This document shows positions 1 to 46,483 of a stretch of DNA of 64,000 nucleotides, in pieces. This stretch comes from Euprymna scolopes. Taxonomy: Eukaryota. Numbering within the stretch: the first letter of the stretch is position 1; every line of letters begins with the position of its first letter. Both the position numbers and the translations under genes were made by a program. The stretch is from the NCBI GenBank assembly GCA_053919585.1, contig CM132786.1, one strand, 5' to 3'. The notes under the pieces were generated by a model. It was not told the DNA's origin and did no database searches. It worked only from the letters and a program-made list of their open reading frames with translations.

Positions 1-2574
1 TAAGCATTGTTTAAACTTCATTGATTATTTTCCCTGAGAAAAGTATTAACTGTAATCATAAGAATTGTAGTAACAGTTCATATATAGAGAGAAAATTGCT
101 ACTTGAGTAATGCCACCTTTTACACATTTGTCCAGCTGGAAAGAAGAATTGCTATAAAATAAAACAGTTTTATGATAGCGTATATATGTTTATGCATTCC
201 ATTGAAATCTTGTAAATGTTTGTGTGCACATCATGATGTGTCTAAGATATATTCTTAATAAAAATGCATTAACCAACGCAATTTCTGTAAAAAAAACTAT
301 CAGCAATAAACATCAAAATCCGAAAAAAAAACTATTACATATTAACATCCTTTAAGATGTTCGTATGAAAACCATGGCATTAACATAAATATTTTTTAAC
401 GGTTGATGTAAATATGTAAGGTATGGCACATCACACCCACGTTAAAATTATTAGCAGAAAACGGAAACATACTCTGCCTAAGTGAATTGGATTATACTAA
501 CACATGCCGTAGATATTTTAGATATAAATAGGGTTATTCAAACGTTAAGACTTTCTGATTAATATCGTCGGTGTTTGTTCTGCTTTTTTTTATAACAAAG
601 TATTATTATATTACATAAGTTTAGCATCATCCGTTTTCTTAATAAATATATCATTCAATAAAATTCAGTTTGCGTCATGACTGATTTGTGATATTTTCGT
701 TTTAATAAGTGTTAATAGACAATGCTAACGTATTCATAGTCATGCATGTCTAAGTGATTATACGAATATTTAATAATCGTTGATAAATTGACAATGCAAT
801 AGTATAGTAATGGTTATGCATTTCAACGTGGTTATAGGAAGAATATATTCAGAATTAATTTCAATGAATATGTAAAAGTAGGTGTGCTGGTATATATTTT
901 AACTAAATGATGATACGGAATAAAAAATGATTTATGAAACGATTTGTGGGAATTGATATTTTTTATAGTGGTTCTTTATTGAATGCATCAAATTGGAAGC
1001 AATCCTTGTAATTAATAGAACATTTAAAACAGTAAAAAAATCGTATTTCAAAAGTCTTAATTACTGTATTTGGTTTCATACTATTCCCTAATATTCACAT
1101 TCTTCTACATTCGTTATTTTTATTAAGTCATTACGTGTCATGATATATGGTAAAAATAAATATCTACTTTTCTTCTATATTCATATCGAAATATCTTGAA
1201 AAAATGAATACGAGGAGGCCATAAATTGTAACTTACATATAAAACTAAGTTCAATCATAAAAGTCTCTGAATCATCTCTAATTAACGCAGAACATTAATT
1301 AAGATGCTGACATCTTTGTGTAAATATTCAACTCATTAAGTTTGGGTAATTATATCAGATTCGAACCTTCACCTTTTGCACCATAAAATACCGGAAAATG
1401 TGTGACCGATAATATCGTATGTTTCCAAGGTTATTCTAATGAGGGACGTGTTCGTGTTAGGGAAGTTCATAATGTTGTTGTTAATTATGAATCACGCGGT
1501 CGCTTCGACACTCCGATTCCAATTAGAAAAGAAGAAAAGGCGTATTCATAACTACTCTACTGTTCTCATTCACCTCGCTGGACATCAAATAAACATGCCC
1601 AATTTCGCCAGAGCCTCTAATGAACACACGGAATCAAAGAAATATTCAAGAAACTAATGCATAATAACTTGATCCGGATACAAATCCATTTATATCCACA
1701 GATGTCAGTGATACACCATTAATCTCTTAATGCGATTAATGGTAATTTGTGTGATATATCCATATTAATTAAAATACAATCGTGTGAAATATTGTATACA
1801 GTATCACATGAAGTGTGAACCACATACAGTTATACAATTTATAGATTCAGAACACTACGTCTCGTAGTATCTCGAGGAAAATAAAGTGTAAATAATAAAT
1901 ATAAATGAAAATAATGCAAATTGAATGCATGTTCTGAAATTATATTAAAACATAGCACGTTGTATATTAAGTCCTTCCGATTGGATGTGAGGGTATTGCA
2001 TATAGAATTATTATAATTAGTGAACTTTTACATTCAGGATCTAAAATTTACATTCTGTCTCTTTCAGATATTTACATTGTAAGACATTGAGACAGAAATC
2101 CTTGCATGTTCTTCCGTCAGTAGAAAATACTCCTCGTCGAATTTCTTAAAAATCATTTAAAATGGATGTGGCGGTACACAAAATGTATTTCTGGCGCACA
2201 AAACGTTAGTCGTGTAAATTTTACTGATCATATCTACTTAAATATAACGCTTGCAGTTTATAACAAATAAGTCGCTTTACTTTTTGAGCGATCTTTGCAT
2301 GGAAATGTTCGCTCTAGGCGAATATGCACAAAGTTCATCGCTTGCGAAACTGAATAGAGAATGCAAGTAAAAATGTACAAAAAAATGATGCTGAAGCAAA
2401 AATACGGGGTCGTTTCATGGTAATACTCAGGTTATTGTAGTGCAAACTTTAAAACAAAATATGTAGCTTTTCATTTGGGACGACCTTCGTAGATACATAC
2501 ATACTCATCATTGAAAAAATAAATATATGAATTTTTGTTTAAGTGTGGCTATAAACAAAATATCTAACCTGTAG

Positions 2575-3500: not shown

Positions 3501-3942
3501 TTATAGAAAATTAAACAAACTATACACAAGATGAATACACAAATGTGGAAATAATCGATGTTCATCCTGTATCAGAAATATGTAACATTATTTTATCATA
3601 CTCTTGTACTACATTAGTTGTCACAATATCTAATTACCCCCAATTCTCTGCTAGTTAAAAGCAAATTTTCATAGGGGATTTTTAGTCAGGTACATATAAA
3701 TATATACTACACTTAATTTTATTATCTCTGCGAAATATCCAAGAAACTATGAACCTGATAGGCTTTCTACTGGTCTGATGAACATATTTACTCACAGAAA
3801 AACAAGATATAGATATGAGTAAGACGAAGGATGTAAAAGAGTGTTACAGAAAATAACGGTAAAAACAAGATAGAAAGAGGCATTTCATTTTGTATATAAA
3901 TATGTTACTCGCACGATTAGAATTGCATTAATTTCATATGGT

Positions 3943-3970: not shown

Positions 3971-5929
3971 TACATAAGAAATTAGTATGATTTAGCTTTT
4001 ACTCTGATGCCAATTATGGATTTTTTTCATGCCTAGATGGGCCATTCCCTATACCTGTTGAAGTAAATAAGCGTATCTCTCTTTCGTTTAAGTGTTATAT
4101 CATATTTCGCATACACTTCTTAACAAGCTATGGAGAGAATTCTGAGAGTCAGGCAAACTACTATTTAATCACGAAAAAATCTTTACGATTTTGTTAATAT
4201 AATTTTACGCCAACTCAAGTTTATGTAACGGACATAAATAGTTTAAAAAACAGAATGGGTGGGATCCTAGTTAACTCATGTTTTACGTGATCTATTTTCC
4301 AAATCAACGTTGTAAGTCAAGCGCAAAAATTACGTTAATTACTAATACATTTAAAGATTCGCATGTGAAACTCTTTATGATAGATGCAATACAGGGAAAC
4401 ATTTCTGAATGAACTAAGCTGTGTGTGTTTTACCTCGTCATTCATTCTACAGTGGACACTATTTACACAGTTTTGCCTGCATCATTATTCTGAAATTATA
4501 ATATACACAACTCCAATAGAAATCAACCAGTGCTAATTCAAACATGATGTCTTAACACACGTCTTAAACTTATTACAATTTTTTTTTAAATTTTAATTCA
4601 TCTCCTTTTGTAAAGATATATTTAATACAAAAACTCTATAACTTTCGAGTATCTTTACATAGGGAACTAACGCGTACATTGGCGTGTAGCCCATGAATGG
4701 TTTATTTACGTTTAATTTAAAAGCCGCTTTGCATTAGACAATTATAGATACAAACAAATCAATTTCAAACTATTGATTTGTTTTATTGCAATTTGTTCTT
4801 TTTATTATCCATANNNNNNNNNNNNNNNNNNNNNNNNNNNNNNNNNNNNNNNNNNNNNNNNNNNNNNNNNNNNNNNNNNNNNNNNNNNNNNNNNNNNNNN
4901 NNNNNNNNNNNNNNNNNNNNNNNNNNNNNNNNNNNNNNNNNNNNNNNNNNNNNNNNNNNNNNNNNNNNNNNNNNNNNNNNNNTGGTAACACTAATAAATT
5001 TTTAGTAGTAGATGTTAGAATTAAACTTGATATTGTTACCGGAGTATATAATTTTATTCCATAAATATTATACATCTGTTTGATGTCGGCCGTTGCTTTG
5101 TCGCACAAAATGCTACAACATGATTTTTATTTTAAAGTTACGCCTATATCTTATGTATTGTTATAGAATTGTCCCTCTTTTGAATATTAAATATAACGAG
5201 GAATAATTTTCCAAGTAGGGTAATTCGCAAAGAAAAAAATGCAAACAATTTAAAAAATAATGATAATATAGCTCATCAAATTCTGTCTGTGTTTGTTTAC
5301 AATATAACGTAAGAATATATATGGGATTGGCGATGGCTGCCCTGGAACCGCCAGGTCTGATTAATATTTGATTTTATAGATATATTCCAACGAAGAAATG
5401 GTGGGTGGCGATTTTTAAATGCACCCTCTTTTTTATCATAAATTAAACTCATTAATGAAAAACATTGAAACATGGGATCGTTCATATGAAGTGGAATACT
5501 ATAATACTAAGCTTTTTATCCATTATACAAAAAAATCCTTTTTTTAAGGAGTAATCATTTACTACGATTTTATTATCAACCTTGCATGGGTAACGTATAG
5601 ATAGTCACCTGTATTTTTTCTCTTTTATTTAGAAAAAAATATCGTTACTTTTAGTATCGGTTTTTTTTTCCTCGATTTTAGATACTTATCGGATGATTAG
5701 CAGTACTAAAAATATCTTAGTAACCGACAGACATATAAATTACCTTTTCTTGAAATTGACAAAAGATAAGCGCAACCGTTTCGAAACGTATTATAAAATT
5801 AATTTTCATAAATAATGTCTCCAATTCATGTTTATTATTAAACACTCAAGTAATATGGTCCAATTGTAATTCAAACAAAACTATTCATTTTTAACCTGCT
5901 TCTATAATAACAACTAACTTACTGTATAG

Positions 5930-5983
<54 letters not shown>

Positions 5984-7339
5984 AATATATGTTCTTGTTT
6001 GGTAAGAAAACTTCACAAATTATCTTGTGCTGCTTGGCTGTGTGAAGTATTACTTTTGGTCAAAATCGCCTGTTATTCTTTCATTGGATTATTCAAATTA
6101 GCGATTATCGATACGTATTCTATGACATTTCGATATATAAAATATCTGAAACCATTACCAGACACATGAATTACATTTGTGTTAAATTTTATAAAATTCG
6201 GCCAAGAGCTTTTCCAGTTCATAGGGAACTCGATCGGTCACACACACACGCACACACATACACACCCACACCCACGCATTAATTCCTCAATATAATAGTT
6301 GAGTTTTAGATGTAACGGGCAATACTGAAAAAAGTCATTGCACTAAGTTTACAACAGTACGACCACAATCGTACCATAGTGTAAAGCAAAAAGGATACAA
6401 AACTTGAAAACAAACTCGATAATGTTTATTGTCCTTTCATATTAGTTTCTGTTCAAACAAATTATCTAGAATTACTTTCGCATGTGTAAATTTTGTATAT
6501 TCCCAATAAAAGCAATTTTCTTAATGAGGAACAACATGATTTAATCCAGGAAAATCTTGAGTGAACGGATTCTACTATCATATAAGGTGCATTAATCTTG
6601 CGAAGGGGTTCGCTCAAAAGAAATTACTCTTGACATATCATATGCATTGGAGAGTGTTCGACATAAACGTTCATAATTCGAGATTTCAAGCTATAGATTA
6701 CCGAAATATATCTACACCATCAATTATTTTAGGTCTAATATTATTTTAAAAATTAGTCTCCGATGGGCAGAATCCGACACGATTCCTCATTTTTATCAAG
6801 TATCTCTCGAGTTGCATTCTGATCCCTGCTGTCGACGACGAATGTTATAAAGGAAAACACGTCAAAACCCCACAATCAAATAGATATGCTGATTCGCGCT
6901 AATTGTACTTGGCTTATTAATTTAAACGCATCAACACCAAAATTAAATGTTTCTCCCAGAAAGTGCTCGATCGTGGATGTGAGAGCTGGAATGTGTANNN
7001 NNNNNNNNNNNNNNNNNNNNNNNNNNNNNNNNNNNNNNNNNNNNNNNNNNNNNNNNNNNNNNNNNNNNNNNNNNNNNNNNNNNNNNNNNNNNNNNNNNNN
7101 NNNNNNNNNNNNNNNNNNNNNNNNNNNNNNNNNNNNNNNNNNNNNNNNNNNNNNNNNNNNNNNNNNNNNNNNNNNNNNNNNNNNNNNNNNNNNNNNNNNN
7201 NNNNNNNNNNNNNNNNNNNNNNNNNNNNNNNNNNNNNNNNNNNNNNNNNNNNNNNNNNNNNNNNNNNNNNNNNNNNNNNNNNNNNNNNNNNNNNTCCATG
7301 TTTTACTACCTTTTTCTTTTTACCCTTGCGTTATGCTTT

Positions 7340-13214: not shown

Positions 13215-14599
13215 CATATTAATGCATATATTTCTGTATGTATAGGTTTATGTATGTTTATANNNNNNNNNNNNNNNNNNNNNNNNNNNNNNNNNNNNNN
13301 NNNNNNNNNNNNNNNNNNNNNNNNNNNNNNNNNNNNNNNNNNNNNNNNNNNNNNNNNNNNNNNNNNNNNNNNNNNNNNNNNNNNNNNNNNNNNNNNNNNN
13401 NNNNNNNNNNNNNNNNNNNNNNNNNNNNNNNNNNNNNNNNNNNNNNNNNNCACTTATCTAAAATATATTGGAGTATTCCCTTTGGCCGCAAATATATTTT
13501 ATGATTCCCTCGTTAAATTAACTGCCGGCAATGTGTTGCATGCAATCTCTTATCAGTCACGAGCATAGCTTTTATATNNNNNNNNNNNNNNNNNNNNNNN
13601 NNNNNNNNNNNNNNNNNNNNNNNNNNNNNNNNNNNNNNNNNNNNNNNNNNNNNNNNNNNNNNNNNNNNNNNNNNNNNNNNNNNNNNNNNNNNNNNNNNNN
13701 NNNNNNNNNNNNNNNNNNNNNNNNNNNNNNNNNNNNNNNNNNNNNNNNNNNNNNNNNNNNNNNNNNNNNNNNNNNNNNNNNNNNNNNNNNNNNNNNNNNN
13801 NNNNNCACAACACACACATATGTACATATATATATATATATTAATTTATATATATATATATATATCTTTATGAAATTATGTGTACTGCATGAAACCGTAT
13901 ATGCCTTCAAGACACTCATAAATTTATCTTTGTGAAGTATATTGCAACATATGATAGGCATGATTCAAAGATCCTTTCTCCTGATATTTTTAATCTTATC
14001 CAAACATTTCTACTAGATTTTATTATGTGTGGTTTATTTTAGTGCTAATTTCTCCTGTTTAGCAAGACAATACTCATTTAAAACTGTTGAATTATTTTTT
14101 TATAAATNNNNNNNNNNNNNNNNNNNNNNNNNNNNNNNNNNNNNNNNNNNNNNNNNNNNNNNNNNNNNNNNNNNNNNNNNNNNNNNNNNNNNNNNNNNNN
14201 NNNNNNNNNNNNNNNNNNNNNNNNNNNNNNNNNNNTTCTCCGCAATAGGATTGTTTATACTCGGGTAGTTACTTGGTACTGCTGCAAATGAATTTATTTT
14301 AATTAACTACTTCATTTTTATTTGAGGTATTACTGTAATTATTCTTAGATTAATTTATTAGCAGAGGAAATTGGTTTTATGATGCTAAGTTCTAACGAGT
14401 CACCAATTATTAAGGCCCGGATGCCACCTGATAATAAGGGTTTATATGTGTACATTGCTCACAGCGAACATGCCCGTCATCGATAGTAGTTGAAATTTTA
14501 TAAATTGGATTATTTAAGGGGATAGCTAATCACGGATTTGTTCACTTTGGACTTGAAAATAACCACACTGAAACTAGTTGGAAAGATTGAAACCAGAGT

Positions 14600-26714: not shown

Positions 26715-28314
26715 TTTATTGGCACGGTAAAATAAAAGTTACATTTTGTCTAATAAATTCTAAAAAAAGGATTACATTAAAGAAAATAACAAAGTATATT
26801 ATGTATTTTTAACTGGCCTTTCCGATGCAGCAATCGGATTTTAGAAAAAATAAATAACAAAGGAACAACAAACATAATTGCAAAAAACCCTTGTTCAAAA
26901 TTATTGGCACGGCTTTGTTTTTCTTTTAGTATCAGTATAATATCAATCAATTTCCGGTTTACGTGCTTTCTGAACTTTTTTATAGCCATATTTTGCTTGG
27001 TTAACGCTAATTCAGTGAATAATTTTTTTCAGATAATTTTTAGATAGCGATTTATTCAAACTATTATAAGTGACTAAATTATAATTTTCAATCGCCATGG
27101 TTAAAACTAAGGAACACAGCGAAGACGTCAGGAAGCTTGTTGTAGCATGCCATACCAATGGGGAGGGCTATGATAAGATTTCAGAGAAGCTAAACCTTCC
27201 CAAATCCACTGTTAGAGCCATAATAAACAAGTTCAAATCGCAAGGCCACGTTATGAGTTTAGAGGGTAGAGGGAGAAAAAGGATTCTTTCCCCAAGAGAT
27301 GAACGGAAAATTGTTCGACAAGTAAAACAATACCCAAGGATCTCTTTTGGGGAGATTGTTGATGAACAGAGCACCTCTGGAGTGAATGTATCTCGACATA
27401 CAGTTGGTAGAGTTTTGAAGAGAGCTGGTTTAAAAGCATGTCGTCCGAGAAAGGCTCCCTTATTGAAGCCTATGCACCTGAAAGCAAGGCTAGCCTTTGC
27501 AAAACGTCATGTTGATAAAGATGTTGCATTCTGGAAACGTGTTCTATGGACTGACGAAACGAAAATAGAGTTATTTGGCCATAATAAAGTGTCTTATATT
27601 TACAGAAAATCTGGCGAAGCTTTCCTGCCTAAGAACACCATACCCACAGTGAAGCACGGTGGAGGCAGTTTGATGTTTTGGGGATTCTTTGCTGCCTCTG
27701 GACCAGGGCGACTTGTTAAGGTCACAGGTAGCATAAAAAAGGAAGATTATGTTAAAATATTGGATGACAACCTGAAAGACTCTGCTAAAGAGCTCTCACT
27801 TGGTCGTCGTTGGTGGTTCATGCAAGATAATGACCCAAAGCATTCGGCTAAACTGACTAAGAAATGGCTTGAGGACAATCATATTAATGTTTTTCGAGTG
27901 GGCATCACAAAGCCCAGACCTTAATCCAATTGAAAATTTATGGAGAACATTAAAATTGAGGGTAATGCAAAGGAAGCCTAAGAATCTTATTCAATTGGAG
28001 AATTATTGTCAGGAAGAGTGGGCTAAAATTACTACTGAAGAGTGCAACAACTTGGTTGTAAACTATGAAAAGCGACTGAGGAAGGTAATCAAGGCCAAAG
28101 GCTATACAATTGATTATTAAATAAATCGTGCCAATAATTTTGAACAAGGGTTTTTTGCAATTATGTTTGTTGATCCTTTGTTATTTATTTTTTCTAAAAT
28201 CCGATTGCTGCATCGGAAATGCCAGTTATTTTCTTTAATTTAATCCTTTTTTTAGAATTTATTTGACAAAATTTAACTTTTATTTTTCCGTGCCAATAAA
28301 TATGATCATCACTG
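26715..28314 (+). mobile_element. Tc1 transposon, IR-DR type, nearly intact
   Basis: ~190-200-bp TIRs (26715-26912, start hidden in N gap; 28127-28314), each with two ttattggcacg direct repeats. Right end is ...tatgatcatCACTG followed by TA. Confidence 0.97.
27097..28120 (+). pseudogene. Tc1 DD34E transposase (~340 aa) split by a single +1 frameshift in a T5 run at 27890-27894
   Basis: Paired-like HTH N-terminus, GRGRK, WTDETKIELFG, TVKHGGGS and QDNDPKH in ORF 27097-27924; [16 protein letters not shown] in ORF 27869-28120. Removing one T gives D-34aa-E spacing. Confidence 0.93.
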
Positions 28315-30701: not shown

Positions 30702-31335
30702 AGCGAAATGGGTGTATGTATGTTCGCTTTTTGTGTATACCCATGATAGACTTTTTTTCAGAGAAGCGTTCAGTCGGCTCACAACTTTTTAAAACTTTTT
30801 ATATCACATATAAAGTTTAATATCTCCGAGTTAAGAACGGATCTCGCCTGTCTATTTTATTTGCTCGCCTTCGGTAAGATAAATATTCAACAGTTTTCGT
30901 CGCCGCATGTGGATTATGCTTTTTTTCTACTAATAAAAGCGACATTAATGCTGGCGGTATTCTTCAATTTTGATCAAAGTGGAAATATTCCTTATATCAG
31001 ACAATTGCTATTCAAATTGAACAAGGGTGGCTGCCACCAACACATTGGGGAAATAAAAATAAAAACTCCGCAGTCAAAGTTGACCTCATCAGGATATTAA
31101 AACGCGCATCTGCAAATTCTAAGTAATTAAATAAATTCAAACGTGTTTCAGTTGGTATGTCGTGGTGGACCAAATGTTAACGTCGCACGGTTTTCTTTAA
31201 TTTCTAACTTTGCCTCATGGGTTCTGGTTCGATCCTCAAACACACATTCCAAAACTTTTTTATTATTTTAACACCCCCCTGAATTTTGATTTACCTCCAA
31301 ACACCCGAACAACGCCGGGTACCCCCCCCTGCTAA
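30700..31335 (+). mobile_element. Helitron-like non-autonomous element, second family
   Basis: Starts after (TA)n with tataagcgaaatgggtgtatgtatgttcg; ends acccgaacaacgccgggt (hairpin) ...gCTAAt. Confidence 0.55.
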
Positions 31336-36292: not shown

Positions 36293-36469
36293 TGGTGAAT
36301 ATTCCTTTAAAGAAAATGTATTTCATATCACAGAAATGTTGAACGAACATAAACACCTGAAATTGTATTATTGTTTTTATTAAAAAAACAATAATACAAG
36401 TTCAGGTTTTTATGTCCGGTCAATATTTCTGTCATATGAAATACATTTTCTTTAAAGGGATATTAACCA
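36293..36469. repeat. ~177-bp near-perfect palindrome (hairpin or MITE-like)
   Basis: tggtgaatattcctttaaagaaaatgtatttcatat...ttgtattattgttttt / aaaaacaataatacaa...atatgaaatacattttctttaaagggatattaacca. Confidence 0.9.
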
Positions 36470-40430: not shown

Positions 40431-41211
40431 TCTGCCATACTAATAGACTGTTCTACTCTCACTTAATACCGAAGGACTAAGCAGTAAGGCGTCAGTCGAT
40501 ATCTGGTGCACAAACTTAGGCCGTTCGTCGTCGACGAGACACAATTAACCTATTGTATATTTTGCAATGCAAACAACTTTATTTTGTCGTTTAGTTTTTC
40601 GTTGAACATTTAGCAGGCTTACAAAAATTTATTTATCGAAATATTTACAGCCCATCAGCATAAACGATTTATGTTTGCATTTGTGGGTGCCCTAGAAAAT
40701 TAAAATAAATACCAACTATACTGTTTCGATTGAATAGCCGGAGTAAATTACAAAATATTGCCGAATATAAAAGTGCATTCTATATATTATGGAGTGTTGG
40801 CAATCTCGTAAGCCATTTAATTTCCAATATTTTTTGAAAGAAATGTTATATATCTATTAAATCTAGATAAAATTTTTGTTTAAAAGTACTTAATCTTGTT
40901 TAAGGATTCTCTTCAAATGAATGAATATCTGAAGATAAATTCTCGAAGCGTATTACATCACTGTTTTGGTTTAATTTTTATTTACTTACATAACCTCAGT
41001 GGCTTTCCAAATATTTCCGTTTTACAGGAGTTTAGAGATTTACCTTTAATATGTGTTAGATTGTATTAAAAGATCGATATATTTTCTATTTATAGATATA
41101 TATTTCCCCATGTAAACCGGTGCAGAAATAAGGTGTCTACATTTTCGTAAATTTACATCATAATAGGAATTGCATACTATATATGTATATATGTATGTAT
41201 ATATATACATA

Positions 41212-41248
<37 letters not shown>

Positions 41249-42830: not shown

Positions 42831-43240
42831 AATGTATATCAAACACTGCCAGATGTCACTTATAGCCGCTACTATACACCTAGGCTGCCCGCTTTTGCTA
42901 TAAAGATGCGTATATCTACTAACTTATAATTCATATTAAATAATACTTCTAAAGAAAAAACCCGCTTTAACAATTCTCAAAAGAAATTGATGACGCTGAA
43001 TCNNNNNNNNNNNNNNNNNNNNNNNNNNNNNNNNNNNNNNNNNNNNNNNNNNNNNNNNNNNNNNNNNNNNNNNNNNNNNNNNNNNNNNNNNNNNNNNNNN
43101 NNNNNNNNNNNNNNNNNNNNNNNNNNNNNNNNNNNNNNNNNNNNNNNNNNNNNNNNNNNNNNNNNNNNNNNNNNNNNNNNNNNNNNNNNNNNNNNNNNNN
43201 NNNNNNNNNNNNNNNNNNNNNNNNNNNNNNNNNNNNNGTG

Positions 43241-43301
43241 TTAGTCTAGCGGCACTGATGAGTTGTGAAACAACGAAACAGGTCTGTATGTCGATGACTA
43301 A
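43241..43301 (+). ncRNA. Type I hammerhead ribozyme 1
   Basis: ttagtc-tag-cggca-CTGATGA-gttg-tgaaa-caac-GAAA-cag-gt-ct-GTA/tgtcg-at-gactaa: all three stems pair and the core is intact; predicted cut after A43288. Confidence 0.93.
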
Positions 43302-43484
43302 AATATATTTTATAAAGCTCCCCTCTTTGGTAGAGCACTCTCGTAAATTATCTTACTCGCTACTTAATTTAGCTGAAATAATGCGAAGCTCGCGATTTGT
43401 TTACAAACAAACGTTTGAGCCCTCTACGAGTAGCGGACGGATGTTTATTTAAATAATCGTTCGGACAGGTTAATTTCGGCCACC

Positions 43485-43556
43485 GATTCCGTAGTCAAGG
43501 GGTAGGACTGCCGACTGTCATCACGACGGTTCTAGGTTCGATCCTCGGCTTGGGAG
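43485..43556 (+). promoter_or_regulatory. tRNA-Asp-derived head with Pol III A/B boxes (not a functional tRNA)
   Basis: A box tagtcaagggg 43492-43502, ct-GTC-a anticodon-loop remnant 43515-43520, B box ggttcgatcc 43535-43544, and a gggag end like tRNA-Asp; acceptor and anticodon stems pair poorly. Confidence 0.75.
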
Positions 43557-43561
43557 AGGTG

Positions 43562-43622
43562 TTAGTCTAGCGGTACTGATGAGTTGTGAAACAACGAAAC
43601 AGGTCTGTATGTCGATGACTAA
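43562..43622 (+). ncRNA. Type I hammerhead ribozyme 2
   Basis: Same as copy 1 except cggTa, which turns a C-G pair into a U-G wobble; predicted cut after A43609. Confidence 0.93.
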
Positions 43623-43805
43623 AATATATTTTATACAGCTCCCCTCTTTGGTAGAGCACTCTCGTAAATTATCTTACTCGCTACTTAATTTAGCTGAAAT
43701 AATGCGAAGCTCGCGATTTGTTTACAAACAAACGTTTGAGCCCTCTACGAGTAGCGGACGGATGTTTATTTAAATAATCGTTCGGACACGTTAATTTCGG
43801 CCACC

Positions 43806-43877
43806 GATTCCGTAGTCAAGGGGTAGGACTGCCGACTGTCATCACGACGGTTCTAGGTTCGATCCTAGGCTTGGGAG
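43806..43877 (+). promoter_or_regulatory. tRNA-Asp-derived head with Pol III A/B boxes, second copy
   Basis: +321 copy of 43485-43556; ctagg-ttcgat-cctag forms a perfect T-arm-like stem here. Confidence 0.75.
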
Positions 43878-43882
43878 AGGTG

Positions 43883-43943
43883 TTAGTCTAGCGGCACTGA
43901 TGAGTTGTGAAACAACGAAACAGGTCTGTATGTCGATGACTAA
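43883..43943 (+). ncRNA. Type I hammerhead ribozyme 3
   Basis: Identical to copy 1; predicted cut after A43930; the array ends about 10 nt after stem I. Confidence 0.93.
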
Positions 43944-43951
43944 AATATATT

Positions 43952-43987
<36 letters not shown>

Positions 43988-44117
43988 CACGTTTAAAAAT
44001 CACATTGAATAATTGTAAAACATGCATGTGTAATAGAATACTTTTAAATATACACCTGTATACACACACATGCACAATAATGTACATACGAACTCAATCA
44101 CCCATATATATGCATAT

Positions 44118-44164
<47 letters not shown>

Positions 44165-46447
44165 TGTATATTACATCTTTTCTTCATAGCTATCATTCAT
44201 TGAATCATAATGTTATTGCAGAAGATATAAAATCATATGAGAGAAGTATATATGTAAACTTTCAGCATGTTTACTGTTAAAATGTATTATTGAAAGCACG
44301 TTTATGTTCACAATAGATGGCAGCTCTTGGTAGCACACAATCCTGTTATTGCACCGCACTTGAAAGAATAATTTATAAGATGTTCAACATCAGGTAATTT
44401 AGAATATAGACTTCGGGTTTATATATTTTTTTGTGGGGGAATCACCCTCCAAATGGACTGGTATACCCGTTATATAAACCTAGACCTTCTGATCACAGGT
44501 ATGGATTAAACACCAGAGCGACCCTCGCCTGCTCGGTGACGTTTACTACTCTTTTCAGTTGTAACCTTTTTACATTATTGTTCCAGTAATACATTGTTAA
44601 AACTCTATTCCGTTGTTCTGATTCTTTGTGGCTTATTGCAACCGTACAAAGTTATATGCTTTGTGATTGCATGCAGCTTCATAAATAAATAATTGGTAAA
44701 TAAAAGGTTTAATANNNNNNNNNNNNNNNNNNNNNNNNNNNNNNNNNNNNNNNNNNNNNNNNNNNNNNNNNNNNNNNNNNNNNNNNNNNNNNNNNNNNNN
44801 NNNNNNNNNNNNNNNNNNNNNNNNNNNNNNNNNNNNNNNNNNNNNNNNNNNNNNNNNNNNNNNNNNNNNNNNNNNNNNNNNNNNNNNNNNNNNNNNNNNN
44901 NNNNNNNNNNNNNNNNNNNNNNNNNNNNNNNNNNNNNNNNNNNNNNNNNNNNNNNNNNNNNNNNNNNNNNNTTAAAGGTATTCTTATACGCAGGGTTAAC
45001 AATGCACTTAATATTTCGAGCAATCACTGAACTGCATTCTTGAACTTATCTGCAACAATTATCTTCATGTACACTCTCATCAAATAATACTAAATAAGGT
45101 TTGAAATTAAAATCTAAGGTACTAAAATACATTACATTCATTCAGTTTAGAAAAGTTCTTACGATTTTTCCTGTCCGCCTTTTTATTGCTGATTTTATTC
45201 CAGCTTAATATTCAATCTTTTTATATTTGATTTTTTTTTAATTTGCATGTAATTGCTTTCCTCTTTCCTCTACAATGTTTATTAATTTCTCTTTTCTATC
45301 CGTTGTTTTGTTCCCGATGCTTATTTATTTCTATTCATAATTTATTTTTAAAATATCTTAAATATTTATAGTCTTGTCTTTTATGTTATATTTATTTCAG
45401 TTTATATTATTCCGTGATCTTTGTCATACTGTATTCCTATTTAATCAAATATATTTATATTATATTGCAATTTTATTTCACTATTGTGTAATATAATTTT
45501 CAATTATCAGCTTAATACCACGTCTTCTATGCTCTCTATATCATGTCAAATATGACCCATCATAGTTGGGGACATATTCATGATCTATTTCTACTAATAT
45601 AATTACCCCATACTTATATAGCTCCACCACTTTGCTTTATAAGGCACAATGTTTATTGTTCCGTGTTCGACCTAACGATTATAAGCTCCTACCAAGCTGC
45701 AGGTATATCCGTTAAAATACCAAATGGAATGAGGGCAATGCTCATCCTCCAGTATATTAGCAAACACATAGAACAATCCCCTATACTCATGAGTCCCTTT
45801 ACTCCTTATTTTTTTAGATCGTTAACACTTCATCTTCTTGTTTATTGGAAGTTGCTGCTGAAGCCAAATATATGACATAACTATATTTTCACTTTAAAGC
45901 TTCGAAGTACCTATTTATGAAAACTGTCTATAAGCTTTCTCATTTATATCCTGTTATTATTTATAATGATAAATTATATAGTATACCAAATAATATATAG
46001 ATATATACATATATATATATATGTATATATATATGCATATATAATACTAGTATAATACTGGTAACCTGTTTTAGCCTTTCCTCCTACATTGCGCCGGATG
46101 TCTATTCCTTTTTATGTTTGTTCATTATAACATTTCCCTAATANNNNNNNNNNNNNNNNNNNNNNNNNNNNNNNNNNNNNNNNNNNNNNNNNNNNNNNNN
46201 NNNNNNNNNNNNNNNNNNNNNNNNNNNNNNNNNNNNNNNNNNNNNNNNNNNNNNNNNNNNNNNNNNNNNNNNNNNNNNNNNNNNNNNNNNNNNNNNNNNN
46301 NNNNNNNNNNNNNNNNNNNNNNNNNNNACGTAATTTGTATATATATATATATATATATGCATGTATATATGTTTATATATATATATGTATATATATGCAT
46401 ATATATGTATATGTACAGAAATCAATTAAAACAATTCGGATGTAATA

Positions 46448-46483
<36 letters not shown>

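What the first reader, a model, noticed from the sequence alone, without database searches (positions are those of the whole stretch)
43238..43952. Young 321-bp tandem array fusing a tRNA-Asp-derived Pol III head to an intact type I hammerhead ribozyme (candidate circular-RNA retrozyme)
Seen in sequence: three hammerheads exactly 321 bp apart. Each has the CUGAUGA/GAAA core, stem II gttg/caac with loop UGAAA, stem III acag/ctgt, a GUA cleavage triplet, and an extended stem I (cggca/tgtcg plus ttagtc/gactaa) around an internal loop. An A/B-box tRNA-Asp-like head sits directly upstream of ribozymes 2 and 3, and the units differ at only about 4 sites. Established knowledge: tandem type I hammerhead repeats (Schistosoma SM-alpha, newt satellite 2, metazoan non-LTR retrozymes) self-cleave into unit-length RNAs that can circularise and are thought to be mobilised by Penelope-like elements. 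Inference: a read-through transcript would release 321-nt monomers (43289-43609, 43610-43930), making this a recently amplified, probably undescribed family. The adjacent N gap may hide more copies.
Basis: partly seen in the sequence, partly recalled or inferred. Interest (0 to 1): 0.9.

Follow-up and report, generated by a model that had tools for sequence, protein, structure and literature searches.

The report
Tandem hammerhead-ribozyme repeat with tRNA-like promoter
Each 321-base unit of this short tandem repeat carries a complete self-cutting hammerhead RNA motif just downstream of a tRNA-like promoter, the layout long known from schistosome Smα elements and animal 'retrozymes', so it is a credible new family member and not a new kind of element.

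Summary
A 321-bp tandem array (43238-43952, + strand, 2.2 copies, 4 differences between the full units) carries three complete type I hammerhead motifs exactly 321 bp apart. A motif this good never arose in 1,500 simulated windows.

- Helix III is 3 bp plus a GGUC tetraloop, not 4 bp.
- The 'tRNA-Asp' label is unsupported. The Rfam tRNA model and default ARAGORN see nothing, and relaxed ARAGORN reads the anticodon as CAT. An exact B box with an A-box-like motif at tRNA spacing is, however, non-random (about 0.002 per window).
- A TTTT run 20 nt past each cleavage site could stop Pol III before a full unit is made.
- Rfam does not reach its threshold for any hammerhead family (19.7 bits against 48.5).

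A promoter directly 5' of the hammerhead, in tandem units, is the published architecture of schistosome Smα/Sjα SINE-like elements. Size, G+C content and lack of coding capacity fit metazoan non-LTR retrozymes. No reverse transcriptase lies in the window. No other copy was found in the window or in any collection I could scan, so conservation, transcription, cleavage and circles remain untested.

Verdict: a real, probably functional, new member of a known kind. Moderate interest.

The parts
43238..43952 (+). Tandem array, period 321 bp, 2.2 copies. Left end hidden by the N run 43003-43237; right end inside a T-run that passes into (TA)n.
43241..43301 (+). Hammerhead 1 (type I): distal stem I 43241-46/43296-301, inner stem I 43250-54/43289-93, core CUGAUGA 43255-61, stem-loop II 43262-74, GAA 43275-77, helix III 43278-87, cleavage after A43288
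43562..43622 (+). Hammerhead 2: same anatomy, with position 2.2 C>U (43574) turning a G-C pair into G-U. Cleavage after A43609.
43883..43943 (+). Hammerhead 3: identical to hammerhead 1. Cleavage after A43930.
43488..43556 (+). tRNA-like module of unit A: A-box-like 43492-43502, B box 43535-43545. The T-stem has a U-C mismatch (C at 43546), and ARAGORN does not call it even at relaxed threshold.
43809..43877 (+). tRNA-like module of unit B: A-box-like 43813-43823, B box 43856-43866. ARAGORN finds a cloverleaf only at <=85% threshold, with anticodon read as CAT. It ends 5 nt before hammerhead 3.
43289..43609 (+). Predicted unit-length RNA 1 (321 nt, 43.6% G+C) released by cleavage at hammerheads 1 and 2. 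The tRNA-like module lies in its 3' part.
43610..43930 (+). Predicted unit-length RNA 2 (321 nt, 43.9% G+C)
43308..43311 (+). TTTT run 20 nt 3' of cleavage site 1: the only T>=4 run in the unit and a possible Pol III terminator
43629..43632 (+). TTTT run 20 nt 3' of cleavage site 2. The equivalent position in copy C (43950-43952) is where the array ends.
43003..43237 (.). N run abutting the array. It hides the left junction, and sequence to its left is unrelated to the unit.
43945..43987 (.). (TA)n microsatellite at the right junction

Best explanation
This is a small, recently duplicated array of a non-autonomous, hammerhead-bearing retroelement of the Smα / metazoan non-LTR-retrozyme kind.

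Each 321-bp unit has three parts: about 170 nt of non-coding body, a degenerate tRNA-derived module with A- and B-box-like Pol III promoter elements, and a complete type I hammerhead 5 nt further on.

Proposed mechanism:
1. Transcription runs across more than one unit, either from the internal Pol III-type promoter of an upstream unit or by read-through from outside.
2. Each hammerhead cleaves after its GUA (after A43288, A43609 and A43930). Because helix III is marginal, two ribozymes may pair through helix III as a 'double hammerhead'.
3. [quoted passage not shown] The promoter module sits near the 3' end of each.
4. These RNAs can be circularised by the host RtcB-type ligase and/or copied by a reverse transcriptase supplied in trans. 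Penelope-like elements are the usual suspect.
5. Reinsertion occurs as tandem units. Tandem copies are needed because a single cleaved copy has its promoter on the wrong side of the ribozyme.

Shown here: the array, the ribozyme anatomy, the promoter-like motifs, the lack of coding capacity, and the single polarity of the ribozyme. Inferred from the known families: transcription, cleavage, circularisation, reverse transcription and the identity of the partner.
For: - Array with period 321, 98% identity.
- Exactly three complete type I hammerheads, + strand only. A motif this good occurred 0 times in 1,500 simulated windows.
- The one substitution inside a ribozyme keeps the pair (G-C to G-U at 43574).
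- An exact B box plus an A-box-like motif lie 43 nt apart (44 in a tRNA), directly 5' of the ribozyme. Such a pair is expected 0.0017 times per window.
- A D-arm/T-arm cloverleaf is recoverable at relaxed threshold.
- Unit size 321 bp and G+C 44% fall within the published ranges for metazoan retrozymes: 150-450 bp, <50% G+C, dimers and trimers upward (PMC7229834).
- No protein family hit for the window's ORFs near the array, and no homologue of the repeat's 64-aa frame.
- Smα is tRNA-derived (PMC2770079).
- The helix III hairpin has no predicted stability on its own, while two helix III segments form a 10-bp duplex of -9.4 kcal/mol. This fits the weak-helix-III, dimer-active type I ribozymes described in PMC7761336 and PMC7229834.
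- The array's right end falls inside the T-run, as expected for the 3' end of a Pol III transcript.
Against: - Rfam gives no hammerhead hit at gathering score. The best is 19.7 bits against 48.5, carried by the core and stem II only.
- The active fold is 5-10 kcal/mol above the MFE. This is usual for hammerheads but is not positive evidence.
- The tRNA-like module fails the Rfam tRNA model and default ARAGORN. The relaxed hit has a 3% false-positive rate and covers only one of the two heads. The A-box pattern was defined after seeing the sequence.
- A TTTT run lies between each ribozyme and the next unit, and T-runs are not depleted, so Pol III may not produce multimers.
- The circular monomer is not significantly more structured than shuffles.
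- Only 2.2 copies were seen. No other copy is in the window, none in the collections scanned, and no RT/PLE is in the window. Family-level conservation and covariation are therefore untested.
Confidence: 0.68

Rival explanations
1. A short Pol III gene, not a retrozyme. Transcription starts at the tRNA-like module, runs through the hammerhead and stops at the TTTT 20 nt past the cleavage site. The result is a transcript of about 150 nt that cuts itself into pieces of about 128 nt and 22 nt. No 321-nt monomers or circles are made, and the tandem array is an ordinary duplication.
For: The only T>=4 run of the unit lies 20 nt 3' of the cleavage site. The promoter-like module is immediately 5' of the ribozyme. 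The array ends at that T-run. From my own knowledge: T4 is a sufficient, though context-dependent, Pol III terminator in many animals.
Against: The 170-nt 'body' would then be an untranscribed spacer, yet it is as well conserved between units as the rest (2 of the 4 differences fall in it). With units this young, that says little. Smα-type elements are reported to yield multimeric transcripts despite being Pol III-driven (PMC6765202).
Confidence: 0.15
2. A silent relic: a once-active hammerhead retroelement insertion, or a small satellite derived from one, that is no longer transcribed or mobilised. The ribozyme looks intact only because the copies are young.
For: Only 2.2 copies, in an AT-rich, microsatellite-rich, apparently gene-poor stretch. 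No partner RT in the window. One head has a T-stem mismatch. No relatives in any collection scanned.
Against: 1.2% divergence between units argues for a recent origin. All core positions are intact in all three ribozymes, and the only ribozyme substitution preserves pairing.
Confidence: 0.12
3. A fragment of a Penelope-like element: tandem pseudo-LTRs, which carry hammerheads, left after loss of the RT-endonuclease ORF.
For: PLE pLTRs always contain hammerheads, and retrozymes are proposed to derive from them (PMC6765202; preprint 10.64898/2026.07.22.740005).
Against: No RT or GIY-YIG domain in any ORF >=85 aa of the window. The 235-nt N run is too short to hide one. PLE hammerheads are described as minimal variants without the loop-loop architecture (PMC7229834), whereas this one has an extended stem I with an internal loop.
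Confidence: 0.04
4. A chance hammerhead-like motif inside an ordinary SINE-derived tandem duplication.
For: Rfam does not reach its threshold. The three copies are one evolutionary event, not three.
Against: 0 of 1,500 simulated windows (about 96 Mb, both strands) gave a motif as good. It also sits in a repeat of retrozyme-like period, next to a promoter-like module.
Confidence: 0.02

Closest known systems
Schistosome Smα / Sjα SINE-like retroposons (Ferbeyre et al. 1998; Laha et al. 2000; as summarised in PMC6765202 and PMC2770079)
   Same: A Pol III promoter module of tRNA origin followed directly by a type I hammerhead. Unit about 320-335 bp. [quoted passage not shown] After cleavage the promoter lies at the 3' end of the monomer.
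   Different: Smα's head is recognised by tRNAscan-SE as tRNA-Gln-TTG (PMC2770079). This head is missed by the Rfam tRNA model and default ARAGORN, and its anticodon reading is ambiguous between CAT and GTC. The ribozyme fails the Rfam hammerhead models. No Smα sequence was available from a tool, so sequence homology was not tested. The host is unresolved, and the window's transposase has its closest relatives in Tara Oceans marine metagenomes.
Metazoan non-LTR retrozymes (Cervera & de la Peña 2020, PMC7229834; review PMC7761336)
   Same: A type I hammerhead in every unit of a short tandem repeat (150-450 bp). G+C <50%. No LTR, PBS, PPT or ORF. Arrays from dimers and trimers upward. A short helix III.
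   Different: The published description says the repeats show no conserved motif besides the ribozyme, and leaves the polymerase open (Pol II or III read-through). Here a tRNA-like A/B-box module is part of the unit. Circular RNA, abundance and PLE co-occurrence are untested. Predicted self-pairing is unremarkable.
Newt satellite 2 and cave-cricket pDo500 hammerhead satellites
   Same: Tandem units of about 330-500 bp with a type I hammerhead whose weak helix III favours cleavage as a dimer (PMC7229834).
   Different: Those are large satellite arrays. Newt transcripts are attributed to Pol II (PMC6765202). No tRNA-like module is reported for them in the papers I read.
Penelope-like element pLTR hammerheads
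   Same: Type I topology, a weak helix III, tandem context, and a proposed evolutionary link to retrozymes.
   Different: PLEs encode RT plus GIY-YIG, and none is in the window. Their ribozymes are minimal, lacking the extended stem I and internal loop seen here.
Plant LTR retrozymes (PMC4918200)
   Same: Non-autonomous, and ribozyme-delimited RNA that circularises.
   Different: Type III hammerheads inside LTRs, a PBS and PPT, about 700-nt circles, high G+C. None of these apply here.

Membership tests
Hammerhead ribozyme, type I | Conserved core: C3-U4-G5-A6-N7-G8-A9, G12-A13-A14, A15.1-U16.1, H17 not G | tested here: met
   All three copies conform, with GUA at the cleavage site.
Hammerhead ribozyme, type I | Three helices around the core, with helix I open and helices II and III closed by loops | tested here: met
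   Stem I is 5 bp, then an internal loop, then 6 bp. Stem II is 4-5 bp. Helix III is 3 bp plus a tetraloop. 0 of 1,500 simulated windows gave a motif as good.
Hammerhead ribozyme, type I | Match to the curated Rfam covariance model at gathering score | tested here: not met
   No hit at gathering. The best clan member is Hammerhead_3 at 19.7 bits against 48.5, aligned on the core and stem II only.
Hammerhead ribozyme, type I | Loop/bulge tertiary contact between stem I and loop II | tested here: inconclusive
   An internal loop lies 5 bp from the core in stem I, and a pentaloop sits on a 4-bp stem II. I could not check the specific contact nucleotides against a tool-derived reference.
Hammerhead ribozyme, type I | Self-cleavage | not testable with these tools
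   Needs in vitro transcription. The energy model puts the active fold 5-10 kcal/mol above the MFE, and helix III alone at 0 kcal/mol.
Metazoan non-LTR retrozyme | Type I hammerhead in each unit of a 150-450 bp tandem repeat, G+C <50% | tested here: met
   Period 321, a hammerhead in each of the three unit starts, G+C 43.6-43.9%.
Metazoan non-LTR retrozyme | Non-coding; no LTR, PBS or PPT | tested here: met
   Only a 64-aa frame per unit, with no homologue among 5.8 billion proteins. The units are simple head-to-tail copies.
Metazoan non-LTR retrozyme | Expressed as abundant unit-length linear and circular RNA | not testable with these tools
   No transcriptome was available.
Metazoan non-LTR retrozyme | Highly self-paired circular RNA | tested here: inconclusive
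   Circular MFE is -85 to -86 kcal/mol with 60-64% of bases paired, but z is only -1.5 to -1.7 against dinucleotide shuffles.
Metazoan non-LTR retrozyme | Multi-copy family co-occurring with Penelope-like elements in the genome | tested here: inconclusive
   No other copy and no RT/GIY-YIG in this 64-kb window. The rest of the genome was not available.
Smα/Sjα-type SINE-like hammerhead element | Internal Pol III promoter (A and B boxes) immediately 5' of the hammerhead, in tandem units | tested here: met
   At motif level only. The exact B box and the A-box-like motif (9 of 11) are 43 nt apart, and the module ends 5 nt before the ribozyme. Such a pair is expected 0.0017 times per window.
Smα/Sjα-type SINE-like hammerhead element | Head recognisable as a specific tRNA (Smα: tRNA-Gln-TTG by tRNAscan-SE) | tested here: not met
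   No Rfam tRNA hit at E<=10. Default ARAGORN finds none. At 85% threshold ARAGORN calls one of two heads, as Met(CAT), with 3% false positives.
Smα/Sjα-type SINE-like hammerhead element | Sequence homology to Smα/Sjα; schistosome host | not tested
   No Smα sequence or repeat library was reachable with these tools. The host is unresolved.
Penelope-like element | RT plus GIY-YIG endonuclease ORF flanked by hammerhead-bearing pLTRs | tested here: not met
   No such domains in 28 of the window's ORFs scanned: those of >=120 aa with a start codon, and the clustered ones among the stop-to-stop ORFs of >=85 aa.

The most novel reading that the evidence does not exclude
The Smα design (a tRNA-derived Pol III promoter placed just 5' of a type I hammerhead, so that only tandem copies are self-propagating) exists outside flatworms, in a probably marine animal. 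That would reflect either independent capture of a SINE head by a retrozyme or an old, widespread lineage. It would give metazoan retrozymes, whose transcription is still attributed vaguely to 'Pol II or III read-through', a concrete internal promoter. The tRNA-like domain might also help recruit tRNA-processing and RtcB ligation machinery for circularisation.
Probability: 0.2. Interest if true: 0.55.

Novelty: new member of a known kind. Interest (0 to 1): 0.35.

Why it matters
How animal retrozymes are transcribed and which enzyme copies them are still open questions. The 2020 review says the repeats show no conserved motif that points to a partner, and invokes Pol II or III read-through (PMC7761336). 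A retrozyme-sized unit with a recognisable A/B-box module next to the ribozyme would be a convenient test case for Pol III-driven production of self-cleaving, possibly circular RNAs. If the host is not a flatworm, it would also show that the Smα architecture is more widespread than the schistosome literature suggests. On present evidence it is one small locus of a well-known class, so its value is as a lead rather than a discovery.

Tried and rejected
1. Rfam at gathering score over the whole window gave nothing. Sensitive mode on the array gave only sub-threshold Hammerhead_3 hits. Sensitive mode on the head alone gave no tRNA hit. Sensitive mode on the whole window gave only microsatellite-driven miRNA false positives.
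2. Default ARAGORN found no tRNA in the window.
3. I looked for further copies in several ways:
- blastn of the unit against the window found none.
- An exact 25-mer of the ribozyme in the metagenome, GTDB-genome and IMG/VR collections gave 0 hits.
- The head-ribozyme junction in genome contigs gave 0 hits.
- A looser core-plus-helix-III pattern in metagenomes gave one chance match (L001) and one unrelated single hammerhead (L002).
- The repeat's 64-aa frame used as a handle in the 5.8-billion-protein database gave no candidate.
4. I sought the host lineage through the Tc1-like ORF. Named relatives are fish or frog transposases at only 45-57% identity. The closest (92%) comes from Tara Oceans marine metagenome contigs of <2 kb. 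This is a hint, not an identification.
5. I looked for an autonomous partner by scanning 28 ORFs against Pfam, and found only a Tc1/mariner remnant.
6. A literature search for the ribozyme sequence string, and a search of the supplement of PMC7229834, gave no occurrence. Ferbeyre 1998 (PMC108972) and de la Peña 2010 (PMC2941103) are not held.
7. I rejected 'tRNA-Asp'. The GTC reading gives a canonical U33/A37 loop but no anticodon stem. ARAGORN's stem-forming register reads CAT. The amino-acid identity is undetermined.
Full report
**1. What is in the sequence**

The region 43238-43952 is a head-to-tail array with a 321-bp period, 2.2 copies and 98% matches without indels. In register, unit A is 43238-43558, unit B is 43559-43879, and the partial unit C is 43880-43952.

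A and B differ at four positions: 43253/43574, 43315/43636, 43468/43789 and 43546/43867. C is identical to A over its 73 bases.

The array begins flush against an N run (43003-43237). The sequence to the left of that run is unrelated to the unit, so the left junction is hidden. I did not try to recover it.

On the right, the last base shared with the other units is 43952, inside the unit's T-run. After that the sequence becomes a (TA)n microsatellite. No other copy of the unit exists in the 64 kb.

**2. The ribozyme**

I wrote a strict type I hammerhead descriptor. It required:
- CUGANGA
- a closed stem II of at least 3 bp
- GAA
- a closed helix III beginning A15.1-U16.1
- H17 not G
- at least 4 bp of stem I

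It hits exactly three places in the window, all on the + strand. C3 lies at 43255, 43576 and 43897, and the cleavage-site A lies at 43288, 43609 and 43930.

Each motif also has a 6-bp distal stem I (ttagtc/gactaa) beyond an internal loop. In 1,500 Markov-simulated windows, the loose motif arose 0.019 times per window. A motif as good as the one observed never arose. The three copies are one evolutionary event, but chance is not a reasonable explanation.

The realistic helix III is ACA/UGU closed by GGUC.

The only substitution inside any ribozyme (43574, position 2.2) changes a G-C pair to G-U.

Against this, Rfam reports nothing at gathering score. In sensitive mode it gives only Hammerhead_3 at 18.6-19.7 bits against a threshold of 48.5, and the alignment rests on the core and stem II. 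I regard that as inconclusive rather than negative, because a motif with so few fixed positions and family-specific stems can easily fall short of a curated cut-off.

The nearest-neighbour energy model puts the active fold at -5.7 kcal/mol (copy B) or -10.6 kcal/mol (copies A and C), against an MFE of about -15.6. The helix III hairpin alone has no predicted stability. Two helix III segments can form a 10-bp duplex of -9.4 kcal/mol.

This is the situation described for type I ribozymes with a weak helix III, which cleave poorly as monomers and well as dimers (PMC7229834, PMC7761336). Whether this one needs a dimer is an inference.

**3. The 'tRNA-Asp head'**

Directly 5' of ribozymes 2 and 3, ending 5 nt before them, lies a segment with an exact B box (GGTTCGATCC at 43535 and 43856). 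An A-box-like motif (TAGTCAAGGGG, 9 of 11 to the consensus as I know it) sits 43 nt upstream, against 44 nt in a tRNA.

In 3,000 simulated windows, such a pair at tRNA spacing arose 0.0017 times per window. I defined the A-box pattern after seeing the sequence, so this figure is somewhat generous.

Dedicated tRNA tools do not recognise the segment:
- Default ARAGORN finds nothing.
- The Rfam tRNA model gives no hit even at E<=10 on a 101-nt slice.
- At 85% of its threshold, ARAGORN draws a cloverleaf for 43809-43877 only. That is the head with A at 43867; the other head has a T-stem mismatch. It reads the anticodon as CAT, not GTC. Of 1,000 shuffled units, 3% also score.

My reading is that this is a degenerate tRNA-derived, SINE-head-like module that retains Pol III promoter-like boxes. 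Its parent tRNA cannot be named.

A second B-box locus at about 31.2 kb shares only the 18-nt T-arm string.

**4. What the unit would make**

Cleavage at consecutive ribozymes gives 321-nt RNAs (43289-43609 and 43610-43930). Each carries the promoter-like module in its 3' part.

Each unit contains one TTTT run (43308-43311 and 43629-43632), 20 nt past the cleavage site. T-runs are not depleted relative to shuffles.

From general knowledge, T4 is a minimal, context-dependent Pol III terminator. A transcript started at a head may therefore stop after about 150 nt instead of reading into the next unit. This is the main weakness of a pure Pol III read-through model, and it is the basis of my first rival explanation.

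The array ends inside that T-run. That is what one expects if the inserted copy derived from a Pol III transcript that terminated there. It is a single observation, and the adjacent microsatellite could equally explain the breakpoint.

The circular monomer folds to about -86 kcal/mol with 60-64% of bases paired. This is only 1.5-1.7 SD below dinucleotide shuffles, so the 'highly self-paired' hallmark is not demonstrated.

The minus strand has no hammerhead.

**5. Surroundings**

The window is AT-rich (26-39% G+C), full of (TA)n and similar microsatellites, and interrupted by 14 N runs.

It has no tRNA or other Rfam family at threshold. The only recognisable protein domains are those of a Tc1/mariner transposase remnant at 27085-28117. 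Twenty-eight ORFs were scanned against Pfam without any reverse transcriptase or GIY-YIG hit.

The transposase's closest relative (92% identity) occurs on short contigs from Tara Oceans marine metagenomes. Named relatives are fish and frog elements at 45-57% identity. The host is therefore a eukaryote, plausibly a marine animal, but it is unresolved.

**6. Comparative data**

None could be obtained for this family:
- Exact and relaxed DNA patterns in the metagenome, GTDB-genome and IMG/VR collections gave no family member.
- The repeat's 64-aa frame has no relatives among called proteins.
- The ribozyme string does not occur in the searchable literature or in the supplement of the main retrozyme paper.

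**7. Comparison with what is known**

[quoted passage not shown] They are transcribed apparently by Pol III and found in tandem. After cleavage the promoter sits at the 3' end of the monomer, so a single copy cannot propagate (PMC6765202, section 11). The schistosome ncRNA survey shows that Smα is tRNA-Gln-TTG-derived (PMC2770079). That is the layout found here.

Metazoan non-LTR retrozymes are defined as type I hammerheads in tandem repeats of 150-450 bp with <50% G+C, without LTR, PBS or PPT. They range from dimers and trimers upward, yield circular RNAs of 170-400 nt, and are probably mobilised by Penelope-like elements (PMC7229834, PMC7761336, preprint 10.64898/2026.07.22.740005). The sequence-level criteria are met here. 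The expression-level criteria cannot be tested.

The element is therefore best filed as a new member of a known kind. It works like Smα or a retrozyme. Membership of the Smα family in the narrow sense (sequence homology) is untested, and one Smα feature, a head that tRNA finders recognise, is not met.

**8. Verdict**

- Right: the array, the ribozyme, the promoter-like module and the retrozyme analogy.
- Wrong or unsupported: the tRNA-Asp assignment and the 4-bp stem III.
- Too optimistic: Pol III read-through, circles and novelty.

The design has been known since 1998, and retrozymes are abundant in many animal genomes, so I score interest at 0.35. The most novel reading still open is that this shows the Smα promoter-ribozyme design in a non-flatworm marine animal, which would give retrozymes a defined internal Pol III promoter. 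I give that about 0.2 probability.

Noticed in passing
window 27085-28117 (+): Tc1/mariner (Sleeping Beauty-type HTH plus the end of a DDE_3 domain) transposase remnant split over two frames. Its closest relative (P0001, 92% identity, intact 340 aa) sits on short contigs from Tara Oceans marine metagenomes (PRJEB4352). This hints at a marine planktonic host or a horizontally mobile element.
   Followed up: partly
window 31150-31240 (+): A second B-box locus. It shares the 18-nt string GGTTCT(A)GGTTCGATCCT with the repeat's head (0 of 500 shuffles reach the score). It may be the T-arm of another degenerate tRNA-derived SINE head. A third B-box match lies at 1367 (-).
   Followed up: partly
L002 (OMLO01007068.1) 306-350 (-): A complete single-copy type I hammerhead in an AT-rich (37% G+C) 9.4-kb metagenome contig. 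It has the same helix III and GUA site as the window's ribozyme but quite different, still fully paired, stems I (6 bp) and II (4 bp). It is not in a repeat. Two tRNA-model hits (about 30 bits) lie at 3703-3770 and 5669-5741.
   Followed up: partly
window 43950-43952 / 43629-43632: The array's right end falls inside the unit's only T>=4 run, the putative Pol III terminator, and then runs into (TA)n. This could mark the 3' end of the transcript that was copied, or simply microsatellite expansion from the unit's own ATATAT stretch.
   Followed up: partly
window 43258-43452, 43579-43773, 43900-44280 (+): An ATG inside the CUGAUGAG core opens a 64-aa frame in each unit. It has no homologue in the 5.8-billion-protein database, and I take it as spurious.
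   Followed up: yes
window 36324-36438 (both strands): A roughly 115-nt segment scores sub-threshold against miRNA-precursor models on both strands (MIR1444 at 38 and 35 bits, mir-87 at 27 bits). This suggests a long near-perfect palindromic hairpin, perhaps a MITE or inverted repeat.
   Followed up: no
window, 14 N runs (e.g. 4814-4982, 6998-7294, 13263-13450, 43003-43237, 44715-44971): N runs of 128-297 nt occur every few kb. One abuts the array, and another lies 760 nt to its right.
   Followed up: no
window 41178-41245, 44103-44176, 46336-46480 and others: Dense (TA)n/(CATA)n microsatellites flank the array. They produce repeated false sub-threshold hits to mir-297, mir-1277 and mir-3149 in sensitive Rfam mode.
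   Followed up: yes
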